Shown: positions 15,320 through 61,526 of the stretch, piece after piece
Position numbering within the stretch: the stretch's first letter is position 1
How the letters are laid out: each line of letters opens with the position of its first letter
From: Pocillopora damicornis
Taxonomy: Eukaryota
NCBI RefSeq assembly: GCF_003704095.1
Contig: NW_020844730.1
Coordinates: 1-64,000, forward strand
DNA length: 64,000 bases
Direction: 5' to 3'
Position numbers and translations under genes: made by a program
The notes under the pieces: generated by a model
What the model was told of the DNA's origin: nothing
The model's input: only the letters and a program-made list of their open reading frames with translations
Database searches by the model: none

Positions 15320-17222
15320 ATGAAGGCAAATATCATCCTATTCACTGTAGGGATAATTTTATCTTTGTCCCAAACAACAGGTTTGAACTCCATCATGTGT
15401 AATGTAACCTGCTTTGTGTCAACAAGGCCCAGTGAAATATCAATACTATTTTAAATCAAAACAAACACAACTTCTCCTGTTTGAGAGAATATTATAGTAG
15501 TGCCAGAAAAGCATTATGAAATCCATTAGAGGGCGAAGAAATCTTTATTATGCCGAATGAACGAAGTAATAGCTCCTTCTAAAGTTTTTCGAAAGAACTA
15601 ATTCGCTCAGCCCCTAAGCCAGAAAACATAGGTAATGGCACAGTATAACAAAATGGAACTGATAGAGCTTCCAATGTTAAGACCTAGTGTTGTAGAGGAG
15701 GATCATCAAACAAGAGTACTGGCATTGCAGTCTTGCGGTCTTGACTCGTCCTTTCATAACCATCCAAACGCTTGTTTTACTAGTTTTTCTGCTTCTCCCT
15801 TTTATTATCTGTCCTGACGAGCTACCTGCCTAAGATGCTAAACCCAGGGCGGTTGGAAAGTTTGAGTGAATTGCTTGTTTGTTTTGATTTCACTTCGATC
15901 TGAGCCTATTTCCCCATGCATGTTTCCTTTGTTCTTTTATGGAAACAGAAGACCCATTGATACAATAACAATTGTTCTTCGTATTGAAGGGAAAAGAGTA
16001 CCCAGAATGTAATGAAAAGCTAAAGAACACGTTCTTGTACAAATGGAAAATGAGCATGAAACAATTTTAACTGAGTTTTGAAACTCAAAATCTTGTCGTT
16101 TCAGATACCACCCACCACGGAAAACATTTTTCAGTTCACCATCAACCAAAAGTTAACATTCCCCAAAAAGCCAAACACAGATTTCTCGAAATGAAAAAGC
16201 AGCCACTTGATGAGAAAACCGCTTATCGAAAGCAACTAAGATACCAGGAGGCCAATAGTGCTATGATAAAAACCAGGCTGGATGATAGCCTAGGAAGAAT
16301 ACCCTGGAGTAATAACCATGAAAACGTTGCATCCTATGTTGACGGAACAGGAGGTGTATCACAACAGAGGCTTTTAGCAATCATGAACCAGTTAACCAAT
16401 GATATCAGAGTAAATGGACGGAGAATCACTCCTCTTCAAACGCAAATGGTACAACAAACTAATGATGGCGACATCAATCCGACATCACCAGCGAGTAATA
16501 TGCAGGACGAGATGCAACCCGATATGCAAACTAGCATGCAAGATGATATGCAGAGTAACACCAATGACATGGGAAATAATGAAGTTAAACCTATACAGAT
16601 ACCAATCAATCAGAAGGGAGGTGATGGTGCACCTGATGCCAATGGACCTGGTGATGGTGCTAATGGACCTGGAATGTTTGAGCGGTTGATGTTTGGCGGA
16701 CTTTCCCAGATAGTAGGAGGAGGAAAAGGGAGTAGCAGTTACTCTGAAACTGGTGGTGGAATGACCAACGTTCCTGGGTTATCATATGGTGGATCAAATA
16801 ATAATGGTGTTATCAACCTTATGGAAAGCGAACATGGATTAAAGCCAATGCGGGGAATGAATGGCATGGGGAGCATAAATGGAATGAACGGGATGATGAC
16901 TGGAATGCATGGGATGATGAACGGAATGGGTATGATGATGCCTGGAACGGGAAGAATGAAAGGCAATTCGTATTTCTCCAGAAGAGGAGAGACCGCGTCA
17001 GCGAGAAAGAAACCGCGATCAAAGCATAAGGAATTTCTTCGAAAGGCCGTGAAGGTAGCTTCGCTATCAAAAGCAGATGAAAGAAAAAACCTCCAAAGGA
17101 TTCCCACAGTTACCATACACCCGAAGGCCAACATTCTGAAGAATAAGCCATACGTTATACCACTAATCCCTAACGATAAAACAACTGACAAGAAACCCAC
17201 AAGACCTCCGCATGGTGCTTAA
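15320..17222 (+). CDS. Cluster gene 1: secreted Gly/Met/Asn-rich low-complexity protein (~392 aa)
   Basis: Exons 15320-15380 (MKANIILFTVGIILSLSQTT, CAG|GTTTG, phase 1) and 16105-17222 (GTTTCAG|), joining in frame with the ORF at 16191. MQxx tetrads, (GMN)n tract and basic C-terminus. Confidence 0.85.
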
Positions 17223-18940
17223 AAATTGTTTAGAAGAATTTCAATGACTGAAAGGAACGAGACAATTGAGATATATTTCATCGCATACATTGGCGGGTAT
17301 TAATGGTGAATTTCTTAAATTGAATGAAAAAAGCATCAATAAAATGTTTGGAACACTGCAAACCATAGCAGTTATTAAGGTTTATCAAATTTTGTGACGC
17401 CTTAACGTTTAGCAGACATTGGGGAATGCGTTGATTCAGCCTAAGCGCAATGCTCCCTTCTCTATAGTCCAGAAGAAAAACTATTTTGTTCGTGACCACT
17501 TGTACAGGCAATTTTTTAAGAGGGGAAAAGTCTTTTAAATTTTACAGATGGTATGACAGATTCACTTCTAAATGGGAGGAGAGAAAGCTGTTGCATACCG
17601 AGGGGGAGAGAGAGGCTGAAGAATTTGAGAATGCCTTTAAAAGGAGGGCTCGTTTGACTTAATTCTCATTCGAAAACCATAAAATTTTATTTGAAAGATG
17701 ACATGATTTTAACAATTCCGCAAAAAAAAATTTTGGGTGGGTGTCCCCTATGAAAGGAAAATTCTTGTATATTTTTCATATTTGGACGGTTATCTATCTC
17801 TCTTTATAGTGGTAATCTCTCTTTGAAGTGAAATTGTAAGACAACTGCGATGGAGGAAATTTTCGATTGAATAAGGAGATGATGCATCCCATCGAAAAGG
17901 TCCTAACAACGTTGGAAGCCGTCAATTTTTTGCAGTTCATAATTTTTTCAGCCGTCAAAGATCACTTAAAAAAATAATTCCCAACACGTTTTCTAATCCA
18001 CCACAGTTTCCTTTAAAATTATGAAATACTTAAGGGCAAAATTGACCCCTTCCTTTATATTATGATATACCTGTAATGTATTGTTGGTTATTTACCACAG
18101 CACCATTCCATCGTTGTATGTTAACACTTACCCTTGTTAAAGTCTTTTTAAAGATGTCATATGGTATAATAGGTTTTCTTTGTTCTTTTTGGTGACAGAG
18201 ATATTGTAGCTTATTAAATATTTAGTTTGACATTGCGAACGAGGGAAGTTTTCCAAAATGGAGAATGAAGTCATTTCGCTAACATCTTGAATGGCAAGCG
18301 AGTCTTCTTGTTCAGTTTCGCTGACGTTTAAACGGTTGAAATGTCGAAAGGAAGATAATTTTATTTAAGCTTAAAACGGTTGTCCAGGCGTAACTGTGGG
18401 AAAAGGTAAGAAATCACCATTAACATTATTTAACACATAATCTTACCAGTGGTTCTTTTGTTAGATCTTCTTTACTGATTAGAAAAAAACAATAATTAAC
18501 ATGGATTAAATCAATGCTAAGTCACTGAATAAAGTGTTGACATAGATAGCAATGTAGACTAAGTTTACGAGGAGTTCTTGATATGATACAGCGAAGCAGA
18601 TAGATCCGAAGTATCTCTGATTTGGTTGAGTAATTTTCGACCACTGAGCAACAATATGACCGATCCTCAACCACTTTTGCTTGTTTGCTCGATCGATCTT
18701 GAAAAATTACCTTTAAAGTGGTCCTTAAAGAAACACCTGCTGAGAATTTACTTGGCCCCATTGCTGAACAGACATAAACTATGCACAGTTAGATTAATTG
18801 GCCGACGATTATGTTAAATTACAATCACAAAACAGTTTTAAAACAATTTATATCAATAGCATGATCATCTCTTCGCGACATCCTCATTTCTCTTCTTTCC
18901 TAACAGCTCACGAATACTACGATGATACTTTAAATGAACG

Positions 18941-21088
18941 ATGACAGGCTACAAATTTGGCTTCCTCCTAACTGCGTTATTATACTTTTTTGCTGGAGCC
19001 TCCATCACAACAGGTACCTTCTAAAAACCTAAAAACCCAGAACCTGTATGTTAAAATTTTCGCACAACTGCAAAATTTTTGCTCTATTATCTAAATGAAT
19101 CAAGTCATGTCTTGGTTTAAGGTAAAAATGATAATTCAACAACAGCAGTGGCTCGACAATTCATTCTTCCACCAAGGATCCATCAGATCAGTCCGTTTGC
19201 CGGCACCATATCAGCTACTGATCCCTCAGTTCTGGCCTTCCATGGGATTCCGGAGACAAGTTCTGAGATACCTTCACAGCAGATTGAGAATCAAATTGCA
19301 CATTTGAACGAACTTACACAACAGCTTCGTGGTATGCCACAGTCTCCTTCCATTACACAAGTAGGCAAAGGCCTACCGATACCGCTTTCTAGGTATGCTG
19401 CGCAGATAGAGAAAGGAGCATCTGAAAATGGTGTTAGCCGTCCATTAGGAGTTGAGCCAAGCTATTTTAGAAATATAGCGGGAAACCCATTGACTGGACC
19501 CAATGGATTAACAAAAGAAGTCCTTTCAGATCTGATGTTTGGAAATCTTAAAAGCCTAGCATCGGTGGGAGGATTAACAACTGCTAATAGTCCTGCGGAA
19601 GACAATGGATTGTCGCCTCAAATGACTGGAAACTCTGAATTGAGTGGATTTAACAGTCCCTTGCTTGAAGAAAAGTTGGCAAAATCACAATCTGGAAAAT
19701 CAGGCCTTGGTCTACCCCTCCCGCCAAATGAAAGTATGGATTTTAATGACCTACCGAACAGTGATCTCGACAATATAAACAAGGCCCCATATCTCCAATC
19801 GAGACATCACGCCAAAAGCAAAAGGAAAAAGAAAGATAATAAGTCTGATGTTGTCACAAAATTGCTACTCTCTTTATTGGTTGACAAATTAAAAGACATA
19901 TATGAAATTGATAAAATGAACAGCTCACAGCGTAAGACGTTGAAACTGGATTCGTCGACGGTAGGAAAAATCGAGAACACTCTGAAGGAACACGGCCATC
20001 CGTCTGACCACAACAAACTTAGTTCTGGAAAAGATGTAAATAAGGAGGCCAAAACATCTGAAAACTTCGAAACTAATCTCTCGTTCCCACTAACCTTCTC
20101 TGATACTAAAGGGACTCAGTTATCACTTGTAGATTCCCCGAAGAATGACAAAGATGACAGTTCTTTACTTGATGTCGACACGAAAAACATCGAGAATATT
20201 ATCAAAGGTATTGAAAATGGGGGTGAAAAGTCTAATGAAACCGAAAGCATCAGAATTGATTCGGGTAACAGTCCTCAAGAAATCTCCCAAAAGACAACTA
20301 AAACTCTTTCACCAGACATAAATCACCTTCAAACGGGATCTACGTCCGAGTTTCATCGTGTTAAAATGGAACCTATAGGTGAACTTGGAAAAACTGCGAA
20401 CATACCGAGTATTTCTGATTATCACCCAACTTTAGAGGTTTCCGAGGCAAACCCTCCGTCTGAACAAATGTTTGAAGTACATACTGACAAAGCAACAATA
20501 TCAACGTTACCTACGTTTTCCATCTCCAGTCTATTAAATCAGGAAATACCTGGAACTGTCAAAGGAAGTAACCGAGTCTTAAATGTGGTAAAGGAAAACG
20601 AGTCCGGGAGTCTTACTGGTTCTAACTCAGCAACAGTGCCTGTCACTACTACAGAAACTGAAGAACATAAAGGTATAACTACAAGTGCCAGTGAAAATGA
20701 CGCCGCTAATTACCTTGAGGCTTCTAGAGTTCTGGGTGCTGTTTTCAATAAAGTGAAGGATCCTCTGGCTAGGAAAAGCGTTGAAGTCGCTATCAAAGCA
20801 ATGTTGAAATTAATGAAGTCAGAAAACAGCTATTCTAAAAAGGAATCAGTTCCATCGTCCAAAAGCTCGTCAATACTTCAGGAAAAAGTAAAAAAACTGA
20901 TGAAAACTATCCATGAACTTTCTAAAATGGTTCATGTTGAAGATGGTTCTCCGCATGGAAAGCACAAAAAGTACTCCCGTGTAAAGCACAAGCTTTTTCA
21001 TAAGCGATTTTCACAGAAACGAACAATCCATCACAGGACAGGGTTGGGAATGCACCATCTTAAGAGAAAACATCAATGGAATAATTAA
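18941..21088 (+). CDS. Cluster gene 2: secreted Ser/Thr-rich disordered protein with His/Lys tail (~679 aa)
   Basis: Exons 18941-19013 (MTGYKFGFLLTALLYFFAGASITT, CAG|GTACC, phase 1) and 19122-21088 (TTTAAG|), in frame with the 646-aa ORF. No Cys in the mature chain. Confidence 0.85.
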
Positions 21089-23305: not shown

Positions 23306-25309
23306 ATGAGGGTGATTTTGACAGCGGTCGTTTTGATTGGGGTTTATTGTGAGCTCTCGAATGGTAATATTCTGCTGTTTGTCTGTGCTATCTTGCAAGT
23401 ACTGATAATACTTAAACGTACATTAATGCAAGTTAATCACTGTTACTTTGCAGGACTTCATAAGGATAAGAAAGGAAAGGGGGACAAGCTCGTTAGTTTT
23501 TTTCGGGACAACAATGGGAGCGTACTTTTGCAGGAAAGTTCTGATGCAAACAGAGATGGGGGGAGACTCCACATGTCACATGTGATTAATTCTACAAAAG
23601 AGAAGGGAAAATCTGAGGGTAGAAAATTGTCAACAACCAAGAGCCTCACGGGAGAGGAGGAAACTAAGCAAGGATACAATAATCATTTGCCAGTTATAAA
23701 AAAAGTTGTCGGAAAGAAGGAAAATAAAACTGGAAATGAGATTAATGACACCAGCTCTAAGCCTAAAGAACAAAAAACCCATTATTATGACAGTAGCCAA
23801 GATAAAAAGAAACAAAAAGCTAAATTTCGCCAGCTTCTATGTGCGCTTTTTAATGTTTCAAATGAAAGTGAGGCTTGTAAAGACAAGCACCATTCTAAGA
23901 AGGCAATGATATGGCCAACGAGAATGATACCGTGGTTAAAGAGAGTACTTCTGAGTAAGCTGAGTCGAGGATCATACAATCAAATGCCCTTTCTAGATGA
24001 CACGAACAGTCCTAGCGAGTCACCTTTTGGAGGAGGTATTCAGAATGGCTTATCCGACAACTGGGATAATGATCCACTTCTGAATATACGTAGAAAGCAA
24101 CATCATGGTTTGAAAATGGTTCCCTTGCTGAAGTCGTTAAAGGCAAAGCTGTATGGCCATGGAACGCCTGGTAATTTTGGTAGCCTCAACGAGGCATTGA
24201 ATGGTGAAGGACTTAATGGATTTGGCCCAATGCCAACCCAAGGCAGCTCGAAGCTGATTCATCAAATACTTGGCCAGGCTATTGGAAGTTCCGACAGGAA
24301 TTCTGTTTTAAACGAGATGATGCAAGAGTTTCTTCTTGCCAACAACCGGGAAGAGACGGAAGGCAATGAAGCATTTTCAGACTTGGCCGATAGAAATAGC
24401 TTCTCGCAACTTAATAACGGTCTTCAGAGCTCTTCACTTCTTCCAGAGCCCAGCTTACAGCTACAAGGCAACACGAGAACACCTTTGACGTCGGAGCAAC
24501 CTATTCATGCCCAAATGTTGGACAATGGTGCTCTTGCACCGATGTCCAATCAACCAATTGGTAATTCTCCTTTGAAAGATGCATCTTTCCTAGGAGGTCG
24601 TTCTCCTATAGGAAGATCTCCTATGGTTGGAAACCACTTGACATTTCCCTCGATGATCAGGCCACTGGGCCCTCCAACATCAAGAAGTTCTGAATTTCAG
24701 AGTTCTGTGTTGGAAGCTCCTCAGAGAGAAGGTTCTCTCCTTCAAAGAGCCGGTGGATTCGACACTCCAATATCGTCTTCAGTGCTACAACGCACTTCAA
24801 ACCCCACTCAGCGTATGTATATGGAAAATGAAAGGGAAGAGCAAGGTATTTCTAGTCAGGGAGATGATTTTGTAGAACGGAATGAAGCCAATGAAAGGCA
24901 TTTACCATTGCGTCAATCAGTGGGTAATAATTTGGTAATGGAAGAAATAAGCGACAATCAGGCGAGAGGAGGAAATCTTCCAATGCAAACAAACCCAGAT
25001 TTAGATCGTATGTTGAAGCTTCAATCTACTTTTAGGTCACCAGAAAGTTCTTCCATGTCAAGGGTTGCTCGACTTGAACTCGATTCAAATCTTGAACATG
25101 GGTTACAGCTACCGGTTGGCTCCATGGGTATGCCCTCTATCTTATCTAAGGACGAAGATTCCATAAACTTTAACGATTTAAATAATGATCGATCCCTTGC
25201 ATTTAGAAGAGGAAAAGTTTTAAAAGGAGGGAAAAATTTGGTCCCCTCATCAAAGAAAGCGCAAATGTCACAAAACAATAAACCTAATATCAAGAAGAGC
25301 AGGGGATAA
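23306..25309 (+). CDS. Cluster gene 3: secreted disordered protein (~637 aa)
   Basis: Exons 23306-23363 (MRVILTAVVLIGVYCELSN, G|GTAAT, phase 1) and 23454-25309 (TTTGCAG|). The 90-nt intron is stop-free, so the ORF track reads through it. Confidence 0.85.
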   Translation: MRVILTAVVLIGVYCELSNGNILLFVCAILQVLIILKRTLMQVNHCYFAGLHKDKKGKGDKLVSFFRDNNGSVLLQESSDANRDGGRLHMSHVINSTKEKGKSEGRKLSTTKSLTGEEETKQGYNNHLPVIKKVVGKKENKTGNEINDTSSKPKEQKTHYYDSSQDKKKQKAKFRQLLCALFNVSNESEACKDKHHSKKAMIWPTRMIPWLKRVLLSKLSRGSYNQMPFLDDTNSPSESPFGGGIQNGLSDNWDNDPLLNIRRKQHHGLKMVPLLKSLKAKLYGHGTPGNFGSLNEALNGEGLNGFGPMPTQGSSKLIHQILGQAIGSSDRNSVLNEMMQEFLLANNREETEGNEAFSDLADRNSFSQLNNGLQSSSLLPEPSLQLQGNTRTPLTSEQPIHAQMLDNGALAPMSNQPIGNSPLKDASFLGGRSPIGRSPMVGNHLTFPSMIRPLGPPTSRSSEFQSSVLEAPQREGSLLQRAGGFDTPISSSVLQRTSNPTQRMYMENEREEQGISSQGDDFVERNEANERHLPLRQSVGNNLVMEEISDNQARGGNLPMQTNPDLDRMLKLQSTFRSPESSSMSRVARLELDSNLEHGLQLPVGSMGMPSILSKDEDSINFNDLNNDRSLAFRRGKVLKGGKNLVPSSKKAQMSQNNKPNIKKSRG

Positions 25310-27376: not shown

Positions 27377-30300
27377 ATGAGGTAAGATAAGAAGAGAACG
27401 CCTTTTAAAAGTAATGACTAGAAATACTCTTCAGTTACTCCAAGTTTTTAGGTCAGGATTCTGACATTTTCGGGTACTTAGAACATCGTTTACTGTAAGA
27501 TGGGGTAACAATGAAAGCCTTATGGTTTTTTTCATGATTGCCCAAATGTGATAATAATTAAACAGCAATCGCCGTGAAGACACAACAAGATCACACAGTT
27601 TCCCGTAGTTTAGTTTTTCTCTGTGAGCCAATTATAGCAAGGTCTGACGGAACAATGTGACACATGTTTGACGCTGTTCTTAAAGCAGGTGGCAGACGAA
27701 TTTTGAATTACTGTGATCCAAAGCCGAGTCCAACCATCTCCTATAGAATCCAAATCTTTCGTAGTTATTTGTAGTCTGGAGTCTGTTGCTTATCTGTCTG
27801 ACTTTATTTTTTTCTCTCAAGAGTGAGACAAAGGCTTGTGGTGAGCCTGTTTGTTTTTGTTTTCCTGAAGGGATTCCTGTTGGCCTCAGCAGGTAAATTT
27901 ATGTATTGTCTATCATTAGTCTCATTTTTTGAATGAACTGTCGGTAAAATGATTAAACGTATATCAGAATTGTAACACCTCTATGAGTTTAAAGGACTTC
28001 ATTCAATGTCAAGCAGTCCTCGTCAAAATAGTCTGTTCCAATCCTTTTAAGTCAAGTTTACTCCAAAAGAAATTCAAATCAACACGCATAGTCGATCATG
28101 CAACAATTGACCTCGAATTATGGGACTTCAATTTTTTGCATTCCGCACAATGGTTTATCATAAAAGTTTGGTAACTCAGGGACCACCAAAAATTTAAAGT
28201 TATCTTTTTTTAAAAAACCTTCAGATGACAAGCAACCGATACCTTCCTTTTCGTCTGCTAACAATGAATTGCAAAGAAGAGATGTCTCCACTGCCTTAAA
28301 AAAAAGTGAGAAACCGAAACAAGGAAGGAAGATCCATCCCTATGTAGGAGGGCATACCCACGATAAAAGAGGATTAACAAAAAGATGGCTCCCTTTTGAG
28401 CAGAAAGCGAGAAAGCTCTCGGTCGTTGCCACGAGTAGTTTGGTGGAGGAGAACACGACAAACAAAAAGGAAAACAATACACGAAACAATGAGCATTCCA
28501 GAAACGCATCAAGTACTAACACATCTTCTCAAGCAACACACCAGACTGCTGATTATGGAATTTTGGGAATTTCTGAAGACGAGGATAGTGCGAAGTGGGC
28601 ACTAGACGAAATGAGAAAAGTAGCTGAAAACAAAACGAATAGCCATGATAAGGAAATCAAACAAAATGTTTCAACTGTGGCAAGCACATTAAGAATAATC
28701 TCATCTAAAAATCAGTCACAGTATGTCAACCGTCCCGTTAAGATTATACTTATCAATTCAGGAGGAAATATGTCAAATGCCTTGACCCAGACGAAGAACT
28801 TGAATAAGAGTAACAGGAATCAAGATAATGAAAATCTGTTCAAAAATTTAAAACCAGATAAAGCGGATGCGGAGCCAATTTCCATGAAGGTGAATACGTC
28901 TTCATCAAAGTTGGAAAAGACGGGTAAAGACACAGCTGGGGTTTATAAAATAAAATCACCGCTTATAGTAATTCCTGAAAGCATACTGCAACAAGCGGAT
29001 CCAGACTTCAAACAAAATAAAACGGCAAGTAGTTCCTCACCACCGTCATCCACAGCTCAAAAAATTAAAACAAGTACACATAATGACACAACTTTCATCA
29101 AAACAGTGCTGCGAAAAGACTCTGGGGCGAATCAGACTAAAGCATTAGACAATACAACGACAAATTTAACTGGACCTCAAAAAGTTAAAGGAAAGACACA
29201 AAACGTCTCGGTTTCAGAAACAGTACTACATCTCTCTGAACTCGGATCTAAGGAAAATAACACCTCAGGTAATGCGACACCCATGGAGGAGCAAAATAGT
29301 CGACCACCAAGTCTTAGCGGCATGGAGCCAGTCGGTTCATCGCAAAAATCAAATCAGTCACAAAAAAATGAAGAGCTTGCGTTATATCCAAAAGCACCTT
29401 CACTTGAAGTGAATATCTCAAGCTTAAGAAAAGGACAGTCCTTCGACTTTCAGATTCCCAGCACGATACCATTAAAGAGCTCTGATCAGAGTAATCATAT
29501 TCACATTGAGCCAGATGATACACTGAATTCGTCTGAATATTTACCAAAAGACATAGAAAGTAACTCAAGCAACAGCAACTTTTTGAATGACACTCTTAAT
29601 AAGGTCTTGCTGGAAGAGCTAGTACGAACAGAGAAATCTAACAAGCTTCTGCAAAAGTTCAATTCAGATATCCTAGCTTCCAAGGCGAAACTATTATTCG
29701 ACAAAGTTAACTTGGGAAGCGAGGTCAATGATCAAACATTTCGAGAGGAATCATCAGCTGATCGAACTTTCTCGGAAAATATCTTGGAACCTTACTCAAA
29801 CGAAGCTTTATTAACCCGAAGGCTCAATAACTTACAGGGGAGACAAAGACAGACGGAAGTTCAACAAGACGAAAGTTTAGCGAAAGCACTGAATTCTTCT
29901 TCAGTCTCTTCGATCATTTTTAGTGCAAACCGGGCTCTTTTTGATACTGATCAAGAAGTTTTCTCGAAGAAGAGCTCCCAGGGTAGACTAAAAGGGGCAA
30001 AAAGAGATAAGGACCACAGACACAAGCGGAGTTATTTTTGGCACCGTCTAACCAAGCATCAAGGTACCAACAGATTGGGTTCAAACGCAGATTATCTTAG
30101 AGGAAACCCCGCGTCAAGAAGAAATAAAAAGCAACGTAAGGCAACTGCACGGCAGGTTATCAATCTTGGGAACCATTTTCTATGGTTTGGTGGTCAGAGT
30201 TCGGCTGATGCAAACGGTTTTCCTCGCCACAACACAGCAACAGAAAACAATGCATTTAGTGTCAATAATTATATTTCAAACTTTCTTAGTTCAGCCAAAG

Positions 30301-41400: not shown

Positions 41401-42529
41401 TAAGAGCAGGCGAACCTGTTAAAGCTAGTTTGGTTCTTTTAGGTGTGAAATTTTCTTGATAAGCACCCTTGAAGTTTTGACTAACAGGTGTGATACGCCT
41501 GACCTTATTGAGTTGCCCATGACAGAATTCGTTCACCCCATAAAGCAACGCTGATGAAAAGTTTACTGTATTTTCAAACCATAGCGATCTTTAACCGCTT
41601 AATTCCATGTAGATATATGTCCTTTTTTTATCATCATGTGGATCGATTTAGTTTCAGTCCGACCCTTTTGACCAAAAAATTACACTTCATTCGTTAAATT
41701 TGGGGTAATCTCCTATTCCCTGGCAACACATGGGATTATTTTGGATTGCTTATGTAAATATTTAATTGGTAAATAACTATAATTTTATGATCTGGGTTAC
41801 CAAAATATTTTATTCTTACATCAGCAACTGAGCTGTGATTTCTTGTGGCTTGCGGCAATTGTTTTGTACCAATATCATCAACAGTGCTTCAGCTCATGGT
41901 AAGTTGTGTATAACTTTGTATTGTCTACCTACTCCCTCATGGTTTTGGATGATTTGCCATTAGTAAATTGTTTTCCATACGATAATATTTTGAGCCTCTC
42001 TGATAATAATATTTTCAATACCTGCTACGAGAACTTTACGTAGTTTCCTTTATGAATCTTAGGAGACTTATTTTCTTGTAGTGCAAAGAAAGCACTGACG
42101 ATGAATCATGATAATGTATATGAAACCTATTTACTTCAGGTAATGATATATCCTAAACAGACGGGAATACTGGGTATCCAGCAAAGTCTGAGAGACCTGC
42201 CATAATATAGACATCGCGAGGAAAACGATCCTGTTACGGCGAGTTTGGATCGTGTCTTTTTGAAAATAAATTATCCATTTGAAATGTCATAAGGCCTTAA
42301 ATCTTTTACTTCTCAGTCTGAAGATCTCTTTCAAAAGGCTTTGGGGCCATTGGGCTACACTGCAAATAATTCTTCTGGTACTTGTAAATTTCGCACGTTT
42401 AGTTCAACGAGTCAATTGTATTTATCTAAAATATATCATGTAGTAGAAACAGTGTTGAAATCTTTTGCTAAACTGTTTTAGTAAAGACAATTTTCATGAT
42501 TTTCTATAGCAAATGCGAAGAATTGAAGA

Positions 42530-45500: not shown

Positions 45501-46026
45501 TGAATACTTTAATGGAGTAAATGGTTATTATGCGAGAGGATTTGGAGAAGAACTCAGGGAACCTATGGGTCCCATGGGGCCTATGGGACCCATGCCTATG
45601 ATTGATGAACCTGCAGTTGGACGGGACAAAGTACCATTAGGATACGAAGACCGACCCAGGATGCCTTATTTTCGTCCTTTTCGGAGACATCATTACTTCG
45701 ACAACGAGGAAGATTTTGATGATGAGGGATTCGACAATGATGTCGACGAAGATGAACCTTATTTTGTTCCCGCTAGAGAACATGCTGCTCTTGAAGAGCC
45801 AGTGGAAGAAGGTCCTGAGAGTGATATCGACGAAGGGTACGATGCTCCTCATGATAGAAAAGCTAAAATAGCAAAGGTTGAAAAACCTGACAAGAAAGGA
45901 AAACAAAAGCACGACAGTCATAAGCTCAACAAAGGACACAAAGATCAATCAACCCTGGCATCAAAGAAGGACATAACCATGAAACGGGAAAAAACATCAG
46001 GTAAACTGCACGAAAGAAAGCACTGA
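42530..46026 (+). CDS. Cluster gene 6: secreted (GGM)n protein with acidic and basic blocks (~601 aa)
   Basis: Exons 42530-42587 (MTRKRSMIFSLLLAVLLFT), 43261-43287, 43844-44551, 44904-44933 and 45044-46026. All introns are GT-AG and phase 1, giving one continuous frame. Confidence 0.75.
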
Positions 46027-46473: not shown

Positions 46474-47644
46474 ATGTTTTGCACTCTGTTGGCCATACAC
46501 GCGCTTGCCGCTAAGGCAGGTTAAGTGTTTAAGAATTGCCTGAATGAGCACCAAAAAATTGAAAGCTTATAGGAAAACATGTGTCTGACTACCTACTTGC
46601 AATGACTCATTAAGGCGATGATGAAATATGAGAATCCTTATTTTTCTAAGAACTTGCTGATTGATTATAGTGACCTTTAAAAACCGTAATTCAATGAGGT
46701 CATAACTTTGTTTAATAAGGCACGCCTGACAAATTTACTTTCTTTGGTTTCGGCTTAATTTGTCTTTCACTTTTCTGCAAGCGTTATTATCTTGACGGCG
46801 TGAACTTAAATAACTGTGATGCAAAACGAACGGTCATAAACCACTTTAAAGAGTAATTCCGTGTCATTATAATCTCATAGGTGTGAGTACTGGGCCAGCA
46901 ACTCCCGAGATGTTTTACAATTCTGCCATGAAACAAATTCAGGACCAGGCCATGGCGGGTATTGAAAAGCAGATGCAAAACCAATTCAGCGCCGCTTGGA
47001 AAAACGCGCACGGAATGGGAGGAAAGCCAAATATGGGAGGAGGAGGGGGAGGAATGGGTCGCATGGCTGCAATGAACGGAATGGGAGGAATGGGAGGAAT
47101 GGGAGGAATGGGAGGAATGGGTGGAATGGGAAGAATGGGAGGAATGAACAAAATGGCGAGTATGCAAAACATGCAAGGTAGCATGGGACCAATGCAAGGT
47201 ATGCCAGGAGGTATGGGCCCAATGCAGGATATGCCGCAAGGCTTAGGAGGTATGGGACCTTTCAATGACATGCCAGGAGACCTGGGAGGCGCAGGACCCA
47301 TGAACGACATGCCAGGAGGTATGGGCGACATGAACGCAATGGGTAACATGGATGGTGCTGGAGGAATGGCTGGAATGGGAGGAACACCTAGTATGGAAGG
47401 AATGGGTGGTGGAATGATGGGTGGTGGATTGGACAATGGAATGAACGGATTCGGTGGAATGGATGGTATTAATGGCTTCACTGGGATGAATAACCCAGGC
47501 ATCACAACCATGGGGGACGCACCTGGTGGCCTATTTAGAAGAGAGTTTCAACGTAAATTAGCAGAAAAGGACAATCATCACAAGAAAGCTAGAATAAATA
47601 AGTCTAAGAAAAGTGCTAGAAAAGCAAAAGAGAAATCGCATTAA
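46474..47644 (+). CDS. Cluster gene 7: secreted Gly/Met/Pro-rich protein, paralogous to the last exon of gene 6 (~269 aa)
   Basis: Exons 46474-46519 (MFCTLLAIHALAAKA, CAG|GTTAAG, phase 1) and 46881-47644 (CTCATAG|). Contains (GGM)n, GMGPMxDMPG repeats and a Lys-rich tail. Confidence 0.75.
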
Positions 47645-49070: not shown

Positions 49071-50895
49071 TCATTTGCCCTTGATCTTAATAATAGGAAT
49101 AGGGCCGGCTGCCTTTACCATCCGATTAACAGCTCTGATCAGTTCATCTTTCTGTTCATCCAAAGTCTTTCTATTAGTTTTTCCCATTAATATCCTCGCC
49201 ACGTGCGCTTCATGCTTCTTGTACTCATCTTGTCTTGTGAACATGCCGCAAATAATTTTGTCGTAAACTGACGTGTCCTTGATCCATTTATCACGAAGTT
49301 GAATTTTCCCAGAGCACAATCTGTGCAGTCTAGTAGTTCTCCTTTCCCCTTTCAAAGCCTTCGCTGTGTTTGCTGGAAGAGAGGTCATTTCACTGAGTGA
49401 CATCCTTACAGAAATACTTTGAGAATAAAATAAATATCCACGATAGTGGACAAAAGTTACGGAAACTTACGGTTTCCTCTGGGGTCTCCTAGAAGATATT
49501 TAAGCAAAGCTGCAAGACAATACGAGAATTGGTTGTTACTGTGACAACACTTGATAGTTGGCAACATGCAGCCGTAAATGGACAACATATTCGCTGCATG
49601 GGTAATAGCATTATTTACCCATTAGAGGTCACCTCTGGGGAATCTCCTCCATATAGCTATTGGACTGTCGGCAATCCGTTAAAACAGTACGTACACTCAT
49701 GAACAAGAAATCGATGAACGATAGATGAGCAAACCAAACCTTTAGGTCAAATTGCAACCTTGTAAATGATAACAAGGTTGCTGTAAGTAACTTTTGACCA
49801 ATTGCAACCGTATATCAGAAAAAATCGTAATTTGAGTCAATAAAATCTTTAGTTTTAGCTCCTGAATGTTCAAGATGGAAAAAAGAAATTTTGATGCGTA
49901 AGTGGTAAGGGGCTAGGTAGCTGAAAAACACTTGAATAGCGGCGTCCTTCGTTTAATGTTTTTGACAGTAATTCCAAATTTTACAAATACTTTGAAAGGC
50001 AGAAATAAAAATCGTATGGTTTCTGTTGTAAACTTCTCCTTTCAGAGGTAGTTGCCACTAAGGCTGTCATGCAACACGAATGTAGAGCAACATACCATAT
50101 TCCCAAGGGCTTCGTCTGTCAATTTTCAATTCACGTTTTTGTATCTTTTCTATGGAAGTTGGAGAAAGAATTTAGTGAATTTAAAAAACGGTAAGAGCTT
50201 TCATGCTACGTAAAATAGGACGAGCAATCTGTGTAGTAATTCGTTATCAAAAGCATTCGACTAGCAAAACAAAAGGTTATAAACTCGAAGAAAAAGTAAG
50301 TATTCAAGAAAGCTTAAATGGAATATTGTATCCCACCGGTATTCAGTATAGTGGTATTATACCTAATACTTGTTAAAGAATCCGCTATTGATATGATAAA
50401 ATATTTCATCTAATTCTTTCACTGGGTTAGATTATTAGGCGAAATTGGTAACATCGGTTAAAATCATGCCGTTCCAAGCGAAAAAGGTAAATGATTATCA
50501 TTTTTCTACAATTTCATTTTCTAAACTGTTGAGAAAATTGATTTAAGACTGAAGCAATCAGGTAATACCTAGCTTTGATTCCTTATTTGACGGATATTAA
50601 ACCAAACCGGCCAATTTCTGTAAAAGTAACACTCAAACAGTTTGCTTGAGGACGAGAAAAATTAAGAAAGCTACATAAAAATAAAAGCGATGACATATGA
50701 TGTTGGGGCTTCACATGTTCCACCTGGTTGAGTTTAGTACCAGTAAAGATTAACCATCCGAAAAACACTATTAACATCACGATTGTTGGACAAAGAAGAT
50801 CAGTGGAGCGTTCTTGTAATTAAATTGGAGTTTATCTTACCTGCGGCTGCCAACTCCAGACAAGCAAAAACTGTTATGAAGAACAACCCCTTCAT
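49071..50895 (-). CDS. Cluster gene 8: small secreted basic protein (internal exons uncertain)
   Basis: Signal exon 50895-50841 (MKGLFFITVFACLELAAA, CAG|GTAAG, phase 1) and last exon 49404-49071 (110-aa ORF with 2 Cys). The frame can be joined through micro-exons 50384-50363 and 49488-49471. Confidence 0.6.
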
Positions 50896-52600: not shown

Positions 52601-52739
52601 AAATAGATTTTAATGCGGGTCTAATTTTTTTGAGAATTTTTTTAGTTACTTGATGGAAATTAGATTTTTAACGTAATTTTAATTTTTTAACCAAATTTTA
52701 ATCATAATTTATATTTGATATCAGGCTCAACCCTGAAAA

Positions 52740-56670: not shown

Positions 56671-59600
56671 ATGAACAGGAGACTTCTTCTAACGTGCCTG
56701 ACATTGTGTTTGTCGCACGCGGGTAAGTTTTATGTTACAAATATCAATCAACCTGGATATAAGATGGTACTGACATGCTGTGAGATGTTTGAATATTCTA
56801 ATTTCTTTCCACCAGCCTCGCCACAAGTAACAAACGATTGATGTACTAACTTCAAATGTGACCCAGTTCCCTCAGATGGAAATTGTTGTCTTCTTTTTGT
56901 ATCATAATTATCAGTTCTGTTTTTAAGTCGCAATCTCGTAATTCTGGTTTTTTGGCTCCTATCCCAGCTTCCTTATCCTATATTTTCCGTTTGACTTGAC
57001 CTTTCATTTACGATTTGAAACCGTATTGTATCTAAAACTATTGCCAAAAGTTTGCCGTCCTTTTTATTGATGTAAGCGAACTGTCTCAAAAATTTCTATG
57101 TATCTTTCCAAGAGAGTGATATTTGTTGGACTCCAAGACCAAATAAACATCCACCATATTCTTATTTTCACAATTTAGGCTAAACTGAATATTAGTGCAC
57201 TCGTAAAGTCGTGATGTTTTTAAGAAGTCCGGGTAAAATCTAGAGAGACATTACAGTCGCGATCAGCGAAAAATGGACAATGTCATATCGAAATGATTGC
57301 TTGTACGGACAGTTTAAGAGTGGCGACAAATCTTATTAAGCTAAAAATAATAGTAAATTGAAAGTGAAAAAGTAAGAAACAGGTACTCTATTGTGCTTTT
57401 CGATTCACTTGCCCTTTCTCTATTCTTAAGAGGAGACCGTCCTAATTTGGTCACTGACAAAGTCTTTTTGGGACATGCTTGCAATAAGTTGCTTATTGGG
57501 CTTGCTAAGTATATTTTCAATGGATCCACTAAAAGAGGAGGATAGACAATCCCCGAAGCTTAATTAAAGCCACTGTGAGGCCTCAACTTGGTAACAAAAA
57601 GAAGAAAATCAAAATTTAATCGCAACAATCATTGACAGATGTTTTGCTCTATTGTGTATACTTTCCTGTTTGCTTGTTTGTTCAGTTTATAGCTTTGTGC
57701 TGTCTAGATGCTTACAGTTTGTTTAGCTATTCGTCTGCTTGCTTCACATGTATATTGTTATTGACATTATTCTTGTTACAGTATTATCGGCACCGTTGGA
57801 GTCATCTTCTGGAAAGTCTGGCGAAGACGAAGGTGAGCTTTGTGAACTGTTTCCTGTGTCTTTAATTTGATAAGCGCAACGGGAGCTGGGATAAGTGGGA
57901 ATTATTCTCTGAGCCTGATGCTCCCAAGAATCACAAGGAAAAGAGGAAACTAACGAATCTGTAGGATGCACCAAATTTATTTATGGTGCAAGGTCAAACA
58001 AATCACAAGGGGTGTTTTATGGACAAAAAAGCGTGCAAATTTCTTTATTTGATTCGTTCTTAGCGCATCCAGCGACTCCAAAGTCGGTTAATCTTGAAGA
58101 TAAAGGTAAGTGTAATTTCAAATCATGCATGTGACCTCCAAATGCATGTGCCGCGGAAATAATAAACAAATTAGCATAGTTTGGTTAAGGTTGTGATCAA
58201 GGGTTAAACGAACTTTAAACCTTCACGCAAAAAATTAGCAGTACTATTCATAGTTGAATGTGTATTGTGCTCTCCCCCGTTCGTGGGACTTAAACCCGTT
58301 GTTAATTTTCTTAATGAGTGTTTTACATAGACTTGGACATAATTCATGAGTACAGCTGCTCCTTGAATGAAAAATATTGGCCTCTGTTATAGTGAGTAAT
58401 GTCATAGTATGGTCAGAAATTTGTTTTTGTCTTAGTAAAAGAGGCAGTGCAAAAAGCTGAACTAGACGCAAGTCTAGCTGCGCAAGATGCTGTAAAGCAT
58501 GGACATAAGGCTGAGACAAGAGTTGAGAGCATCAAAAGCTCTGAAGCAAGTGAGGGCAGTAATGATCACAATTCAGACGAGAAGCCACCAGCTTCCAGAA
58601 AACATGAGACGTCAGGTAAACCCAGCGATTCCCTTAGTTAAGTTCAACCATGCTAAAACTGAAATGGTGAGATTCTCTGTTCTATTTGAATCTATGCTAA
58701 TTAGTCGGAACTTTATGAAACTTAGCACCAAAATTTGTGTCAGGGCAGCAGTCTTCGATCAGCTCCTCAGTTTCGCTGCCAACTTAATATCATCTTCAAT
58801 AAAACCTTAGTTACAAAATGGCTATGTAAAATTATCATCATTTTTGTAGCAAGTGACCTGGACGAAGGACCCCATGTAAAGCGAGTAAAGGAGCACAAGG
58901 TAAACCGAAAGCCAAGCGGAATGGGGAAGATGTTAGGACTGGGTGAACTGGGAGACATTGGAGGAAACAATAATGAGTACAAAGAAGACACTAGGCTGGA
59001 GGATCGCTTAGCCATGGAAGCTGAAGAGGAAAAGAAATACGAAACCGGAGAAGGATATGGCACAGGAGGAGGAGGAGGAGGAGGAGGAGGAGGTGGAGGT
59101 GGTGGTTGGGAAGATGGAGGAAAAGGTGTGAACTGGGCCACAAATATCCAAAGACAAGACGCTGCAGAGGTAAAAATGACTATGTCTAAAATGCCTCATT
59201 AAAGAGGACTTGCTGAAGCTTTCATTCAGCAAACAATTCACTTAGCATAAGGTAGAGAGTGGACAAGATATTACAAAGATTGCAAATCGTAAAAATCACC
59301 AAAGTACTGTGAGCACGTAGTAAACTTTGGTCTTCCATACAAATCATATTTATCTGTTTCCCCATTGCTTTAATTAGCTAGTTAAGAGCCGTAGAGCTGC
59401 TTTTACTCTTTTTCCTTGTTTATACACAGAAACAAAGCATTCAAGCCCAAGTTGCCTCTGAAAGTGCACATGAGTTGGATGAGATCCAGCGCGCCATTGC
59501 GGCTGAGTCTCAATCTTCACGCGGTTCTGCATCAATTGGCAACGGAGGTGCTTCAGTAGTTGGGGGAGCAGGCGGGGTATGTAATACTCTTTCACTTTCT

Positions 59601-61526
59601 ACTTTCCACCATTTACTGATTTATTTTGTCGAGCTTAAATAGAACATTTTTACGGATGTTTTTCTTTTTACAAAAGCAACCGATATTGTACAAAACGTAA
59701 ATAAACAAGTCATTGTTTGTATTGTTTGTCATTATCCAACCGCGCTAAGTAAAGTACAAAGAATGCGGAAGTAGGCAAAAGTGCACGCTACAACCTCGAA
59801 ACTGAATCCGATAATCAATGAGTTTTAATGATTGAAATAAATGAATAATTATATTCATCAACCCGGCATACGTTGCCCTTATTGTGACTTTTACTCATAT
59901 TTCCATGAAATCCTGATGTAGAAGATGATTCATTTCGAGATCCATGTATCATATCACTTATCATGAAAAGCTCGATGCGTCCCCAAACTTTTCATTTGAA
60001 CACCAACTAACAACGTCGTTCGTTATGTATGTTTGCCTATCAAAGTGCAGTGATGATTGTTTACAGTATTTGCTCATCAAAATAGGTTCAGGATCAAGAA
60101 GGTATGCAACCAAGGATATCAAATCCAGAAGGAGGAAGAGGGCAACCAATGGCCTTTGTAGGAGCTCAGCAAAAAGGAATTACTCCTTCTGAGAACCAAG
60201 GTTAATGCACTTATATACCAATCATCTTTTTCTTCACCACCGAAATGGGCTCTGACAGTAAGATGCCTTCTAACTTTCCTAATCTTAACCAACTGTAATA
60301 ACCTTAACCCACCTAAAGGTGGTCCTTTCACGACTATAAATCGCAATTAGCTATGCCAGTGTTAACTTTCTTCAAATACGTTTTCTCAACTAGCTTACAA
60401 GTAAGCTACCTAGAACAGTATACCAACAGAGAGCTTCCTCACTTTGGCGATTAATAGAGAAACTAATGATACACATATTCCAGCATTCTAACAAGACATC
60501 TTGTTGAATGTGTCTCTCCTTTTGCATGCCTGCATGATGACGGACATATAAAAACCTTGACCACGCAGAGGAATTTCAGGAATATTCATCACCTTATCTA
60601 TCCGTTGGTCAGCCAGGTTGGTCCAAATATCTCGTAGTTCCCCTTTTCTTCAGTCGCGTCTTTTCCAGTTCGAAAATATCTAAAAAGAAATTAGGAAATT
60701 TCATACTTCCTTCTTGCTAACGAGTATCGCTGGTAGTCATCATTTTTATTCAAAAATTAATCTCTTACATTCAAGAGACACTCTAAACAATAAAAAAACA
60801 ACAATAACAACAGCACACACACAAGCATACAGCCGACGTGAGGCGTTTCAATTAACCGAAAATTTTCGCACAGAGATCTCAAGCCTCGTTCACCAAGCCG
60901 ACAAAATGTTGCCGGGCGAGATGAGAGGATCATCTCAACAAAACAACATGGTAATCGGTGGCTTAGGAGCCCGTGGAAGTCAGGGTGTAAGTGAAGGTAT
61001 AGCAAGCTTTGGAGGAATAGAGGGGGGGCAGCAACTTGGAGCACAAAGTCAAGTATCACCGATGGAGCAACCTCCCGTGGCATCCGAAAGAGCTGGATAT
61101 GGAGGTGCCTTGGAGCAAGGTGCAGTGAATCAGGAAGGATTGGGTCAAGGGGGTCTGGCAGGATTGAGTGACTCTGCAGTGAGCCGCATGAGCGAAGGTG
61201 GAACAGCGGGAGGATCCTTGCAAGGAATCCAGGGAGCTCAGGATGTTCAAGGGATGCAGAGCTTGACATCTGCTTTTGCAGGGGGGCAACAAGTGCAGGG
61301 TGGAATGCTATCTGATGGAGGAGGTGTTAGCAGCTTGCAAGGGCAAGGATTAATGGGAGGTGGTCTTCAAGGAGGCTTACAAGGTATGATGGGCGGTGGA
61401 TTGGCAGGCCTGCCGGCCATGGGCGGTGGAGGACAATTTGCACAACAGCAAATGTCATTTAAAAAGGTTTGTGGCAAAAAGCCGAAAAAAAAAATTAAAC
61501 ATCGAAATGACGTTATCTATAACTGA
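56671..61526 (+). CDS. Cluster gene 9: secreted Gly/Gln/Glu-rich protein with poly-Gly (~519 aa, 8 exons)
   Basis: Exons 56671-56722 (MNRRLLLTCLTLCLSHA), 57782-57832, 58064-58105, 58436-58615, 58850-59169, 59430-59576, 60086-60200 and 60874-61526. All GT-AG, phases 1,1,1,1,0,0,1, open throughout. Confidence 0.75.
59065..59106 (+). repeat. Coding (GGA/GGT)n microsatellite encoding Gly14
   Basis: Read directly within exon 5 of gene 9. Confidence 0.9.

What the first reader, a model, noticed from the sequence alone, without database searches (positions are those of the whole stretch)
15320..61526. ~46-kb cluster of nine orphan secreted low-complexity protein genes with one shared architecture
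Seen: nine consecutive genes, with no unrelated host gene recognised between them, each have a hydrophobic signal-peptide exon ending in a phase-1 GT donor (15380, 19013, 23363, 27892, 36466, 42587, 46519, 50841, 56722). In seven, a splice acceptor lies just upstream of the ATG (15305, 18906, 23293, 36343, 42509, 50899, 56621), implying a non-coding first exon. The mature chains are Cys-poor, mostly low-complexity, and largely unalignable to each other by eye. Known analogy: vertebrate SCPP genes form a cluster recognised by exon structure rather than sequence (SCPP introns are phase 0, so this is analogy, not homology). Caveat: phase-1 introns after signal peptides are common in animals generally. 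Inference: an old tandem family, co-expressed in one secretory cell type, that supplies components of an extracellular material (cnidocyst/spirocyst, adhesive, mucus, egg coat or skeletal matrix).
Basis: partly seen in the sequence, partly recalled or inferred. Interest (0 to 1): 0.92.

Follow-up and report, generated by a model that had tools for sequence, protein, structure and literature searches.

The report
Ancient coral–anemone cluster of secreted disordered proteins
A 47-kb run of about nine coral genes for secreted, mostly unstructured proteins is real and transcribed, and its core has kept the same gene order in sea anemones, so it is an old, uncharacterised anthozoan locus and not a set of coral orphans or a skeleton-specific invention.

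Summary
All nine signal-peptide exons with phase-1 GT donors are at the stated coordinates. RNA contigs from three studies confirm the junctions of genes 1 and 2, including the non-coding first exons. Transcript-derived proteins confirm genes 5 and 8.

Three corrections:
- The genes are not orphans. All eight genes tested (g1-g8) have an ortholog in another stony coral (dN/dS 0.10-0.30). Order g1-g8 is fully colinear in that coral.
- The core g4-g5-g6-g8(-) keeps its order and orientation in Nematostella vectensis and in a third deep lineage. In Nematostella, g5, g6 and g8 also keep their phase-1 signal-exon donors.
- A single family is not demonstrable. Profile comparison links only g6b and g7 (the Gly-Gly-Met pair).

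Gene 8 is a compact, conserved 149-aa protein with four exons, not low-complexity. The signal exon of gene 7 is not conserved and is doubtful.

The core exists in a non-calcifying anemone. The g5 ortholog's accession range is absent from the Stylophora skeletal proteome. A skeletal-matrix role is therefore unlikely.

The best reading is a co-regulated block that supplies disordered cargo to one secretory cell type shared by anemones and corals. The cell type is unknown.

No paper names any ortholog. Earlier scan notes concern this same window only, not other DNA.

The parts
14862..17357 (+). g1. Non-coding exon 1 at 14862-14996. Signal exon at 15306-15380 (ATG 15320). Large exon at 16105-17357 (stop 17222). 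393-aa product with a conserved N-terminal module and a Gly/Met/Asn-rich tract.
   Evidence: RNA contig joints in runs X5 and X16. Frame check. Ortholog at 71% identity in L014. dN/dS 0.25.
18244..21088 (+). g2. Non-coding exon 1 at 18244-18405. Signal exon at 18907-19013 (ATG 18941). Large exon at 19122-21088. 680-aa Ser/Lys-rich product with a very basic C-terminal tail.
   Evidence: Joints seen in all 4 runs, 3 studies. Ortholog at 77% identity in L013/L014. dN/dS 0.26.
23306..25309 (+). g3. Signal exon at 23306-23363 (predicted acceptor at 23293 upstream of the ATG). 90-nt intron. Large exon at 23454-25309. 638 aa.
   Evidence: Phase-1 donor and acceptor. Signal exon 81% conserved in L012/L014. 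Ortholog at 72% identity. dN/dS 0.20. No RNA junction data.
27377..32849 (+). g4. ATG at 27377 with a donor after 27381 (phase 2). Signal exon at 27822-27892 (phase-1 donor). Giant exon at 28225-32849 (about 1540 aa). Conserved N-terminal motif, His/Arg/aromatic blocks, poly-Asp and a terminal 3-Cys module.
   Evidence: start conserved in L012. Orthologs in L012 (61%) and L002 (40%). Both ends conserved in Nematostella L009 and in L015. N-glycosylation sequons 37 against 20.7±3.8 expected.
36406..39039 (+). g5. Signal exon ATG 36406 to 36466 (predicted acceptor at 36343). Large exon at 36899-39039. 734 aa. A dibasic site lies directly before a conserved mature N-terminus. Several conserved helical blocks sit in a disordered chain.
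   Evidence: P0056 and XP_022788498.1 match the spliced N-terminus. 43 orthologs. Alignment A1. Nematostella homolog has the same phase-1 intron. AlphaFold pLDDT 43.6 with isolated helices.
42530..46026 (+). g6. Signal exon at 42530-42587 (predicted acceptor at 42509). Exon g6a at 43844-44551 (phase 1-1). Exon g6b at 45044-46026 with a Gln/Met helix, (Gly-Gly-Met)n tract, acidic block and basic tail. 583 aa.
   Evidence: Signal exon conserved in L001 and L002. Orthologs in L001, L002, L011, Nematostella L009 and L015. Nematostella keeps phase-1 splice sites at the signal exon, the g6a donor and the g6b acceptor.
46881..47644 (+). g7. Gly-Gly-Met exon paralogous to g6b (253 aa, Gly 27%, Met 17%). 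The proposed signal exon at 46474-46519 is doubtful. The exon could instead be an alternative terminal exon of g6, since both junctions are phase 1.
   Evidence: hhalign g6b against g7 gives 99.6%, E 2e-24. Own-genome hit E 1e-9. Signal exon not conserved in L010. g7 is absent between g6b and g8 in Nematostella and L015.
49071..50895 (-). g8, on the opposite strand. Four coding exons: 50895-50841 (signal), 50149-50096, 49509-49471 and 49372-49071. All introns are phase 1. 149-aa conserved basic helical protein with a dibasic site after the signal peptide and a conserved C-terminal Gly(-Lys/Arg).
   Evidence: Transcript protein P0092 maps exon by exon. Alignment A2. 53% identity to the Nematostella gene at the same position and strand. 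dN/dS 0.10.
56671..61526 (+). g9. Signal exon at 56671-56722 (predicted acceptor at 56621). Candidate internal exons around 58436-58615 and 58735-59202. Terminal Gly/Gln/Met-rich exon ending at 61526 with a basic tail. Model unresolved.
   Evidence: No RNA or ortholog evidence was obtained.
46589..46614 (.). 26-bp non-coding block, 96% identical in a coral whose proteins are about 70% identical. It contains C/EBP-like and AP-1-like half sites and lies about 270 bp upstream of the g7 exon. Possible regulatory element.
   Evidence: AP-1 sites are not enriched in the window as a whole.

Best explanation
Shown:
- The locus is a conserved microsyntenic block of hexacorallian genes for secreted proteins. 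Seven or eight are co-oriented genes for Cys-poor, largely disordered proteins of 270 to about 1560 aa.
- One small conserved helical protein (g8) is encoded on the opposite strand.
- Most genes follow one plan: a 5'-UTR exon, a 46-107-nt exon that carries the signal peptide and ends in a phase-1 donor at the cleavage site, then one very large exon.
- The genes are transcribed in adult colonies and are under purifying selection.
- The core g4-g5-g6-g8(-) has kept order and orientation since the coral/anemone split. In Nematostella, g5, g6 and g8 also keep their phase-1 signal-exon donors.
- g7 is a later, coral-side duplicate of the Gly-Gly-Met exon of g6.

Inferred:
- The block stays together because its members are controlled as one regulatory unit in one regulated-secretory cell type common to anemones and corals.
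- Its products are deposited together as a non-skeletal extracellular or intra-organelle matrix.
- The Gly-Gly-Met and Gly/Gln/Met domains would give flexible, self-associating segments.
- The basic C-terminal tails (10 to 20 of the last 40 residues in seven products) would bind polyanions.
- Conserved dibasic sites (g5, g8) and the terminal Gly(-basic) of g8 point to processing in a regulated secretory pathway.

The cell type (cnidocyte/spirocyte or gland cell) is not determined.
For: - Junctions and expression: 4 runs, 3 studies; RNA runs hold about half of the words of the g1-g2 stretch, which is about the exon share.
- Spliced N-termini.
- In-frame models.
- Orthologs: 43 proteins for g5 at 46-96% identity and 21 for g8.
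- Purifying selection: dN/dS 0.10-0.30.
- Colinearity g1 to g8 in one coral contig.
- g4-g5-g6a-g6b-g7-g8 in a more distant coral.
- g4-g5-g6a-g6b-g8(-) in Nematostella chromosome OW051986.1, with the same phase-1 introns.
- The same core order in a third deep lineage.
- Disorder: no Pfam hit, low pLDDT with isolated helices, composition.
- Passage through the ER: N-glycosylation sequon excess in g4 and g6a.
- The cluster ends at about 61.5 kb, and ordinary GPCR and transporter genes follow.
Against: - No expression data by cell type were available, so co-regulation and a common material are inference only.
- Sequence gives no sign that most members are related, so the shared exon plan may be the common signal-peptide/phase-1 pattern of animal secreted genes.
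- g8 differs in strand, size, fold propensity and exon number. It may be a bystander kept in the block by regulatory constraints.
- g9 and the g7 start lack transcript or ortholog support.
- RNA contig depths for g1 and g2 are modest, which does not suggest a bulk structural product.
Confidence: 0.6

Rival explanations
1. First reader's version. All nine genes descend from one ancestral gene by tandem duplication and have diverged beyond recognition, as in the vertebrate SCPP family.
For: - Same orientation for eight of nine genes.
- The same signal-exon/phase-1 plan, and phase 1 at all CDS introns mapped except the first of g4.
- g6b and g7 are proven duplicates.
- g1, g6b, g7 and g9 share Gly/Met/Gln-rich composition.
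- Disordered proteins lose alignable signal quickly.
Against: - Profile-profile probabilities are below 2% for every pair except g6b-g7, and 59-68% for g1 in the compositional tract only.
- The g5 profile of 19 orthologs finds nothing else in the genome.
- Members are individually well conserved for a very long time (46-53% identity to distant relatives), so erosion since that time cannot explain the lack of similarity. Any common origin would have to be much older.
- Phase-1 introns after signal peptides are common in animals generally (own knowledge).
Confidence: 0.2
2. Cnidocyst, especially spirocyst, components. The block encodes matrix, thread or adhesive proteins of a stinging-cell organelle. 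The Gly-Gly-Met domains would act as a cnidoin-like elastomer.
For: - Gly 20-27% and Met 13-17% in g6b and g7 resemble Hydra cnidoin, which has Gly 24% and Met 17% (PMC4321713).
- A short pro-piece ending in a dibasic site in g5 and g8 recalls the Lys-Arg-terminated propeptides of nematocyst proteins (PMC4321713).
- Homologs were found only in hexacorals so far, the clade that has spirocytes (preprint 10.64898/2026.06.16.732747).
Against: - No minicollagen-type Cys-rich domains. g6b and g7 have no Cys at all, and the cnidoin repeat motif is absent.
- The taxonomic limit is weak, because the profile was built from corals only.
- Only two of nine products show the dibasic pro-piece.
- No expression data.
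Confidence: 0.22
3. Skeletal organic matrix cluster of calicoblast cells, a coral analogue of the SCPP genes in function as well as form.
For: - Secreted low-complexity proteins, poly-Asp in g4, and a coral-side extra Gly/Met gene (g7).
- A Met-rich matrix protein is known from mollusc nacre (own memory, not checked).
Against: - The core genes exist with the same order in the non-calcifying anemone Nematostella.
- The products are not acidic, with net charge -18 to +17.
- The Stylophora skeletal proteome table holds no accession in the XP_0227884xx/5xx range that contains the g5 ortholog. The other orthologs' accessions were not obtained.
Confidence: 0.05
4. No common function. The genes are unrelated secreted-protein genes held together by a long-range regulatory landscape or by chance, and they are expressed in different cell types.
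For: - No detectable homology among most members.
- g8 differs in every respect.
- No co-expression evidence.
Against: - Nine consecutive secreted, domain-less genes with no other gene between them.
- The same order and strand are retained in three deeply separated lineages, which is hard to get by chance for fast-evolving genes.
Confidence: 0.13

Closest known systems
Vertebrate SCPP (secretory calcium-binding phosphoprotein) gene cluster
   Same: A tandem, co-oriented cluster of genes for secreted, Cys-poor, intrinsically disordered proteins. It is recognised by exon plan (non-coding exon 1, signal peptide in a small exon) more than by sequence.
   Different: - SCPP introns are phase 0, whereas here the introns are phase 1.
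- SCPP members are one demonstrable family tied to mineralised tissues. Here common descent is shown only for g6b and g7.
- The core of this block predates coral calcification, because it is present in Nematostella.
Mammalian epidermal differentiation complex (loricrin, involucrin, SPRR and LCE genes). Comparison from own knowledge.
   Same: A conserved cluster of genes with a non-coding first exon and one large coding exon. They encode repetitive, disordered proteins that are co-expressed and assembled into one structure.
   Different: Those proteins are cytoplasmic, cross-linked by transglutaminase and have no signal peptide. They are unrelated in sequence and taxon.
Hydra cnidoin (nematocyst wall elastomer; PMC4321713)
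   Same: A secreted, disordered protein with Gly about 24% and Met about 17% and a Gln-rich context. g6b and g7 have Gly 20-27% and Met 13-17%, preceded by a Gln/Met helix.
   Different: - Cnidoin is Cys-rich and is flanked by minicollagen Cys-rich domains.
- Its repeat is a Gln/Cys/Gly decapeptide.
- g6b and g7 have no Cys, and their unit is Gly-Gly-Met. No sequence homology was found.
Coral skeletal organic matrix proteins (CARPs, SAARPs, galaxins, USOMPs; PMC7115838, PMC3748352)
   Same: Secreted, often low-complexity coral proteins, some of them encoded in tandem.
   Different: - Those are acidic or Cys-rich and have been recovered from skeleton.
- These products are near-neutral to basic and are not in the Stylophora list for the accession range checked.
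- They have anemone orthologs.

Membership tests
Vertebrate SCPP family | All introns within the coding region are phase 0 | tested here: not met
   All mapped CDS introns are phase 1, except one phase-2 intron right after the ATG of g4.
Vertebrate SCPP family | Non-coding first exon, with the signal peptide in a small second exon | tested here: met
   RNA joints for g1 and g2. Predicted acceptors for g3, g5, g6 and g9.
Vertebrate SCPP family | Descent from SPARC/SPARCL1 and linkage to it | not tested
   No SPARC-like ORF was noticed in the window or in the next 40 kb. No dedicated search was made.
Cnidoin / minicollagen-type capsule wall proteins | Minicollagen-type Cys-rich domains at the termini | tested here: not met
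   Cys counts are 0 in g1, g2, g5, g6b and g7, and at most 5 in the others.
Cnidoin / minicollagen-type capsule wall proteins | Gly/Met/Gln-rich disordered elastic domain | tested here: met
   Met by composition only: g6b has Gly 20.2% and Met 12.9%, and g7 has Gly 26.9% and Met 17.4%. The cnidoin repeat motif itself is not present.
Coral skeletal organic matrix proteins | Recovered from cleaned skeleton by mass spectrometry | tested here: not met
   The table in PMC7115838 has no XP_0227884xx/5xx or PFX268/269 accession. This covers only the g5 ortholog and its accession neighbours. No paper names any ortholog ID.
Coral skeletal organic matrix proteins | Restricted to, or specialised in, calcifying lineages | tested here: not met
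   g4, g5, g6 and g8 are present in the same order in Nematostella vectensis.
   hhalign gives 99.6% for g6b-g7 only. g1 against g6b/g7 gives 59-68% in the Gly/Met tract. All other pairs are below 2%. BLASTP finds nothing significant. The g5 profile finds only itself.
Conserved microsyntenic block | Same gene order and orientation in independent, deeply diverged genomes | tested here: met
   Two corals, Nematostella and a third lineage, L015.
Granin-like regulated-secretion proteins | Acidic, disordered, with multiple conserved dibasic processing sites | tested here: inconclusive
   The products are disordered but not acidic. Conserved dibasic sites were seen only near the N-termini of g5 and g8.

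The most novel reading that the evidence does not exclude
The block is a hexacoral counterpart of the vertebrate SCPP or epidermal-differentiation loci. It would be one chromatin domain, kept intact for about 600 million years, whose disordered products are made together in one cell type. They would jointly build a hexacoral-specific secreted structure, for example the spirocyst thread or adhesive, or another organelle matrix. The Gly-Gly-Met domains would act as a Cys-free elastomer or coacervate phase, and g8 as a processed, amidated partner or regulator.
Probability: 0.2. Interest if true: 0.85.

Novelty: new variant of a known kind. Interest (0 to 1): 0.6.

Why it matters
- Small-scale gene order is, from my own knowledge, poorly conserved between sea anemones and corals. 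A block of fast-evolving, domain-less secreted-protein genes that has kept order, strand and intron phase across that distance implies a strong shared constraint, most simply common regulation.
- It gives a defined and genetically tractable entry point, because Nematostella has the core genes. The products are a set of abundant-looking but wholly uncharacterised cnidarian secreted proteins, including Cys-free Gly-Gly-Met proteins of possible materials interest.
- It removes these genes from the list of candidate coral-specific biomineralisation genes.

Tried and rejected
- Pfam on all large exons and on the Nematostella ORFs: no family.
- ESM Atlas for g5 and g7: no usable hit.
- PDB sequence profiles for g5 and g8: nothing.
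- AlphaFold with ortholog alignments: g5 pLDDT 43.6 and g8 pLDDT 41.4. Both are too poor for a meaningful fold search.
- Literature by ortholog identifiers (Stylophora, Orbicella, Desmophyllum, Nematostella; accession and LOC prefixes): no paper.
- Free-text search for Met-rich secreted cnidarian proteins: none.
- Supplements of the Stylophora cell atlas are not held in usable depth, so the cell type could not be read.
- The Nematostella matrisome paper is domain-based and does not cover such proteins.
- Homolog search with g7 was swamped by low-complexity candidates and gave one hit only.
- The look-up of encoding contigs had no record for the NCBI coral proteins P0002 and P0039 and no DNA for P0070.
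- Other Gly/Met-like hits in the genome (C2698, C2029) are a non-secreted Ser/Gly/Met/Thr repeat protein and a microsatellite. They are not relatives.
- AP-1 motif enrichment across the window: none.
- Skeletal-matrix reading: rejected for the core genes.

Full report
**Source.** The window is the first 64 kb of a 315-kb contig (C1365) of a 234.35-Mb assembly in 4,393 contigs. The best named relative of one of its proteins is Stylophora pistillata XP_022788498.1 at 84% identity. The organism is therefore a stony coral close to Stylophora, a pocilloporid. The assembly size and contig count match what I recall for the published Pocillopora damicornis assembly, but that is memory and was not tested. 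The 456 N positions lie in a transposon near 8.2-8.9 kb and were left alone.

**Check of the observation.**
- All nine hydrophobic exons ending in G|GT with one base of a split codon (phase 1) are at the stated coordinates, eight on + and one on -.
- Each is followed by a phase-1 acceptor that opens a long reading frame. The acceptors are at 16105, 19122, 23454, 28225, 36899, 43844 (then 45044) and 46881.
- The large frames are 343 to 1,526 codons in DNA of about 38-40% G+C.
- A local frame check showed that every assembled model is a multiple of three.
Searches were made exon by exon by reference, or with natural database proteins.

**Transcripts.**
- RNA runs hold about half of the sampled words of the g1-g2 stretch, which is roughly its exon share.
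- I laid contigs of four poly-A or oligo-dT runs from three studies on 13400-19399. For g1 they gave GT..AG joints 14996|15306 and 15380|16105, in two runs from two studies.
- For g2 they gave joints 18405|18907 and 19013|19122, in all four runs.
- For g5, a transcript-derived protein (P0056) and the NCBI Stylophora model start with the predicted signal peptide joined to the large exon.
- For g8, transcript protein P0092 maps onto four minus-strand exons: 50895-50841, 50149-50096, 49509-49471 and 49372-49071. All of its introns are phase 1.
- The 27892 exon of g4 has no ATG. The ATG is at 27377, and a donor follows five bases later. This arrangement is conserved base for base in another coral. 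The intron that is a 5'-UTR intron in the other genes therefore sits just inside the coding region of g4.
- Signal exons of g2, g3, g4, g5, g6 and g8 are 74-89% identical at DNA level in other corals.
- The proposed g7 signal exon (46474-46519, unusual donor GTTAAG) is not conserved. The g7 exon may instead be an alternative last exon of g6, because the g6a donor and the g7 acceptor are both phase 1.
- g9 is multi-exonic. I could not fix its model.
- Between the genes there are only reverse-transcriptase fragments.
- Downstream of 61.5 kb come a class-C GPCR, transporters and a rhodopsin-type GPCR, so the cluster ends there. Its left edge is lost in transposons and the contig end.

**Not orphans.**
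- g5 has 43 homologs at 46-96% identity, including Stylophora and Montipora.
- g8 has 21 homologs, including Stylophora, Orbicella, Desmophyllum and Montipora.
- Against a coral whose proteins are about 70% identical, dN/dS is 0.10-0.30 for g1 to g8. These are constrained protein-coding genes.
- Walking along that coral's 209-kb contig gave g1-g2-g3-g4-g5-g6a-g6b-g7-g8(-) in the same order and orientation.
- A more distant coral (40-54% identity over the alignable parts of g4-g7, 73% for g8) keeps g4-g5-g6a-g6b-g7-g8(-).

**Deep conservation.**
- A profile of 19 g5 orthologs, searched against 1.84 billion representative proteins, found 14 proteins. They include Nematostella vectensis XP_048576696.1.
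- The Nematostella locus (chromosome OW051986.1) carries four genes in this order:
  - a giant ORF of more than 2,877 codons, whose N-terminal motif and C-terminal Cys module match g4;
  - the g5 homolog;
  - a gene with a g6a-like exon and a Gly/Met-rich g6b-like exon;
  - on the opposite strand, a g8 homolog at 53% identity.
- The Nematostella g5, g6 and g8 genes also have a signal exon ending in a phase-1 G|GT.
- A third lineage (L015) is about equally distant from the coral and from Nematostella. It shows the same g4-g5-g6a-g6b-g8(-) order.
- g7 is missing in both of these lineages, so it is a later duplicate on the coral side.
- A recent preprint puts the coral-anemone divergence at about 600 million years (10.64898/2026.06.16.732747).

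**One family?**
- BLASTP among the products finds nothing significant.
- Profile-profile comparison with ortholog alignments gives 99.6% probability (E 2e-24) for g6b against g7. It gives 59-68% for g1 against g6b and g7, restricted to the Gly/Met tract. It gives below 2% for every other pair.
- The g5 profile finds only g5 in the whole genome.
- The members are individually alignable across the coral-anemone distance. Erosion since that split cannot explain their mutual dissimilarity, so any common origin would have to be much older.
- The shared exon plan is real. However, phase-1 introns at signal-peptide ends are common in animal secreted genes (own knowledge), so it is weak evidence for common descent.

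**The proteins.**
- There are no Pfam, PDB or Atlas matches.
- About two thirds of residues are disorder-promoting, GRAVY is -0.3 to -1.0, and Cys counts are 0-5.
- AlphaFold on g5 gives isolated helices without a fold, at pLDDT 43.6. These helices coincide with the conserved blocks of alignment A1.
- The chains are therefore not featureless. g1, g4 and g5 have conserved modules.
- g4 and g6a carry an excess of N-glycosylation sequons (37 against 20.7±3.8 expected, and 5 against 1.5±1.1). This fits passage through the ER.
- Seven of the nine products (all but g1 and g4) end in a tail with 10-20 Lys/Arg/His in the last 40 residues.
- g6b and g7 have Gly 20-27% and Met 13-17%, with 9-bp-period arrays.
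- g5 has a conserved dibasic site directly before a conserved mature N-terminus, in corals and in Nematostella.
- g8 is different. It is a 149-aa, basic, helical, strongly conserved protein (48 invariant columns in 18 sequences). It has a dibasic site after the signal peptide. It also has an invariant C-terminal Gly, usually followed by Lys or Arg, in corals, Nematostella and L015. That pattern is the usual signal for C-terminal amidation, which is my inference.

**Function.**
- Shown: the products are secreted-type, the genes are transcribed in adult colonies and are constrained, and the linkage is ancient.
- Inferred: the block is held together by common regulation and feeds one regulated-secretory cell type shared by anemones and corals. 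The products would end up together in a non-skeletal matrix.
- The skeletal reading is unlikely for three reasons:
  - The core is present in a non-calcifying anemone.
  - The products are not acidic.
  - The Stylophora skeletal proteome table lacks the accession range that contains the g5 ortholog.
- A cnidocyst or spirocyst role is attractive. The composition resembles Hydra cnidoin (PMC4321713), g5 and g8 have dibasic pro-pieces, and homologs are so far known only from hexacorals. It fails the membership test for capsule-wall proteins, because there are no Cys-rich domains.
- A gland-cell secretion (mucus, adhesive or glycocalyx component) is equally possible.
- I could not obtain cell-type data. 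The atlas supplements are not held, and no paper names any ortholog.

**Verdict.** 'Orphan', 'one family' and 'skeletal matrix' do not hold. The notable result is the conservation of a block of domain-less secreted-protein genes between corals and sea anemones, apparently undescribed. Its function remains open.

Noticed in passing
window 13600-14200: A short segment is covered by very many RNA contigs in all four runs (summed word depth up to about 1,476). Many of them have loose ends running into unrelated sequence. It looks like a dispersed, transcribed repeat and not part of g1.
   Followed up: no
window 1-11100: Transposon-rich left end of the contig. It holds tyrosine-recombinase-element ORFs (3074-4136, -), two copies of a LINE-like ORF1 and endonuclease (6548-7507 +, 8151-10010 -, partly masked N) and an integrase-like fragment at 10713-11069. 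These hide the left border of the cluster.
   Followed up: no
window 46589-46614: A 26-bp block is 96% identical in a coral whose proteins are only about 70% identical. It contains C/EBP-like and AP-1-like half sites, upstream of the g7 exon. It is a candidate enhancer or promoter element. AP-1 sites are not enriched window-wide.
   Followed up: partly
window 34390-34704 (-) and 53800-54650 (+): Reverse-transcriptase fragments are the only recognisable non-cluster coding remnants between the genes.
   Followed up: no
G000:C1365:66785-71119, 77417-79366, 87013-87948, 95778-97496: Directly downstream of the cluster lie ordinary genes: a class-C GPCR with a ligand-binding domain and a 7TM exon, two MFS-type transporters and a rhodopsin-type GPCR. 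They are identified by eye from ORF translations only.
   Followed up: no
L009:1-8632 (Nematostella): The Nematostella counterpart of g4 is about twice as long (more than 2,877 codons in one open frame). It contains a highly charged Lys/Arg/Glu repeat region around 5.5-6.3 kb that is open in several frames.
   Followed up: no
window 23364-23453: The 90-nt intron of g3 is open and in frame. A retained-intron transcript would still encode a continuous protein, with the signal peptide followed by 30 extra, mostly hydrophobic residues.
   Followed up: no
G000:C2698:353075-354652 (L016 1576-3153, -): A 525-aa ORF without a signal peptide carries (Gly-Met-Ser/Thr)n repeats. It matched g6b only by composition and is not a relative.
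   Followed up: yes
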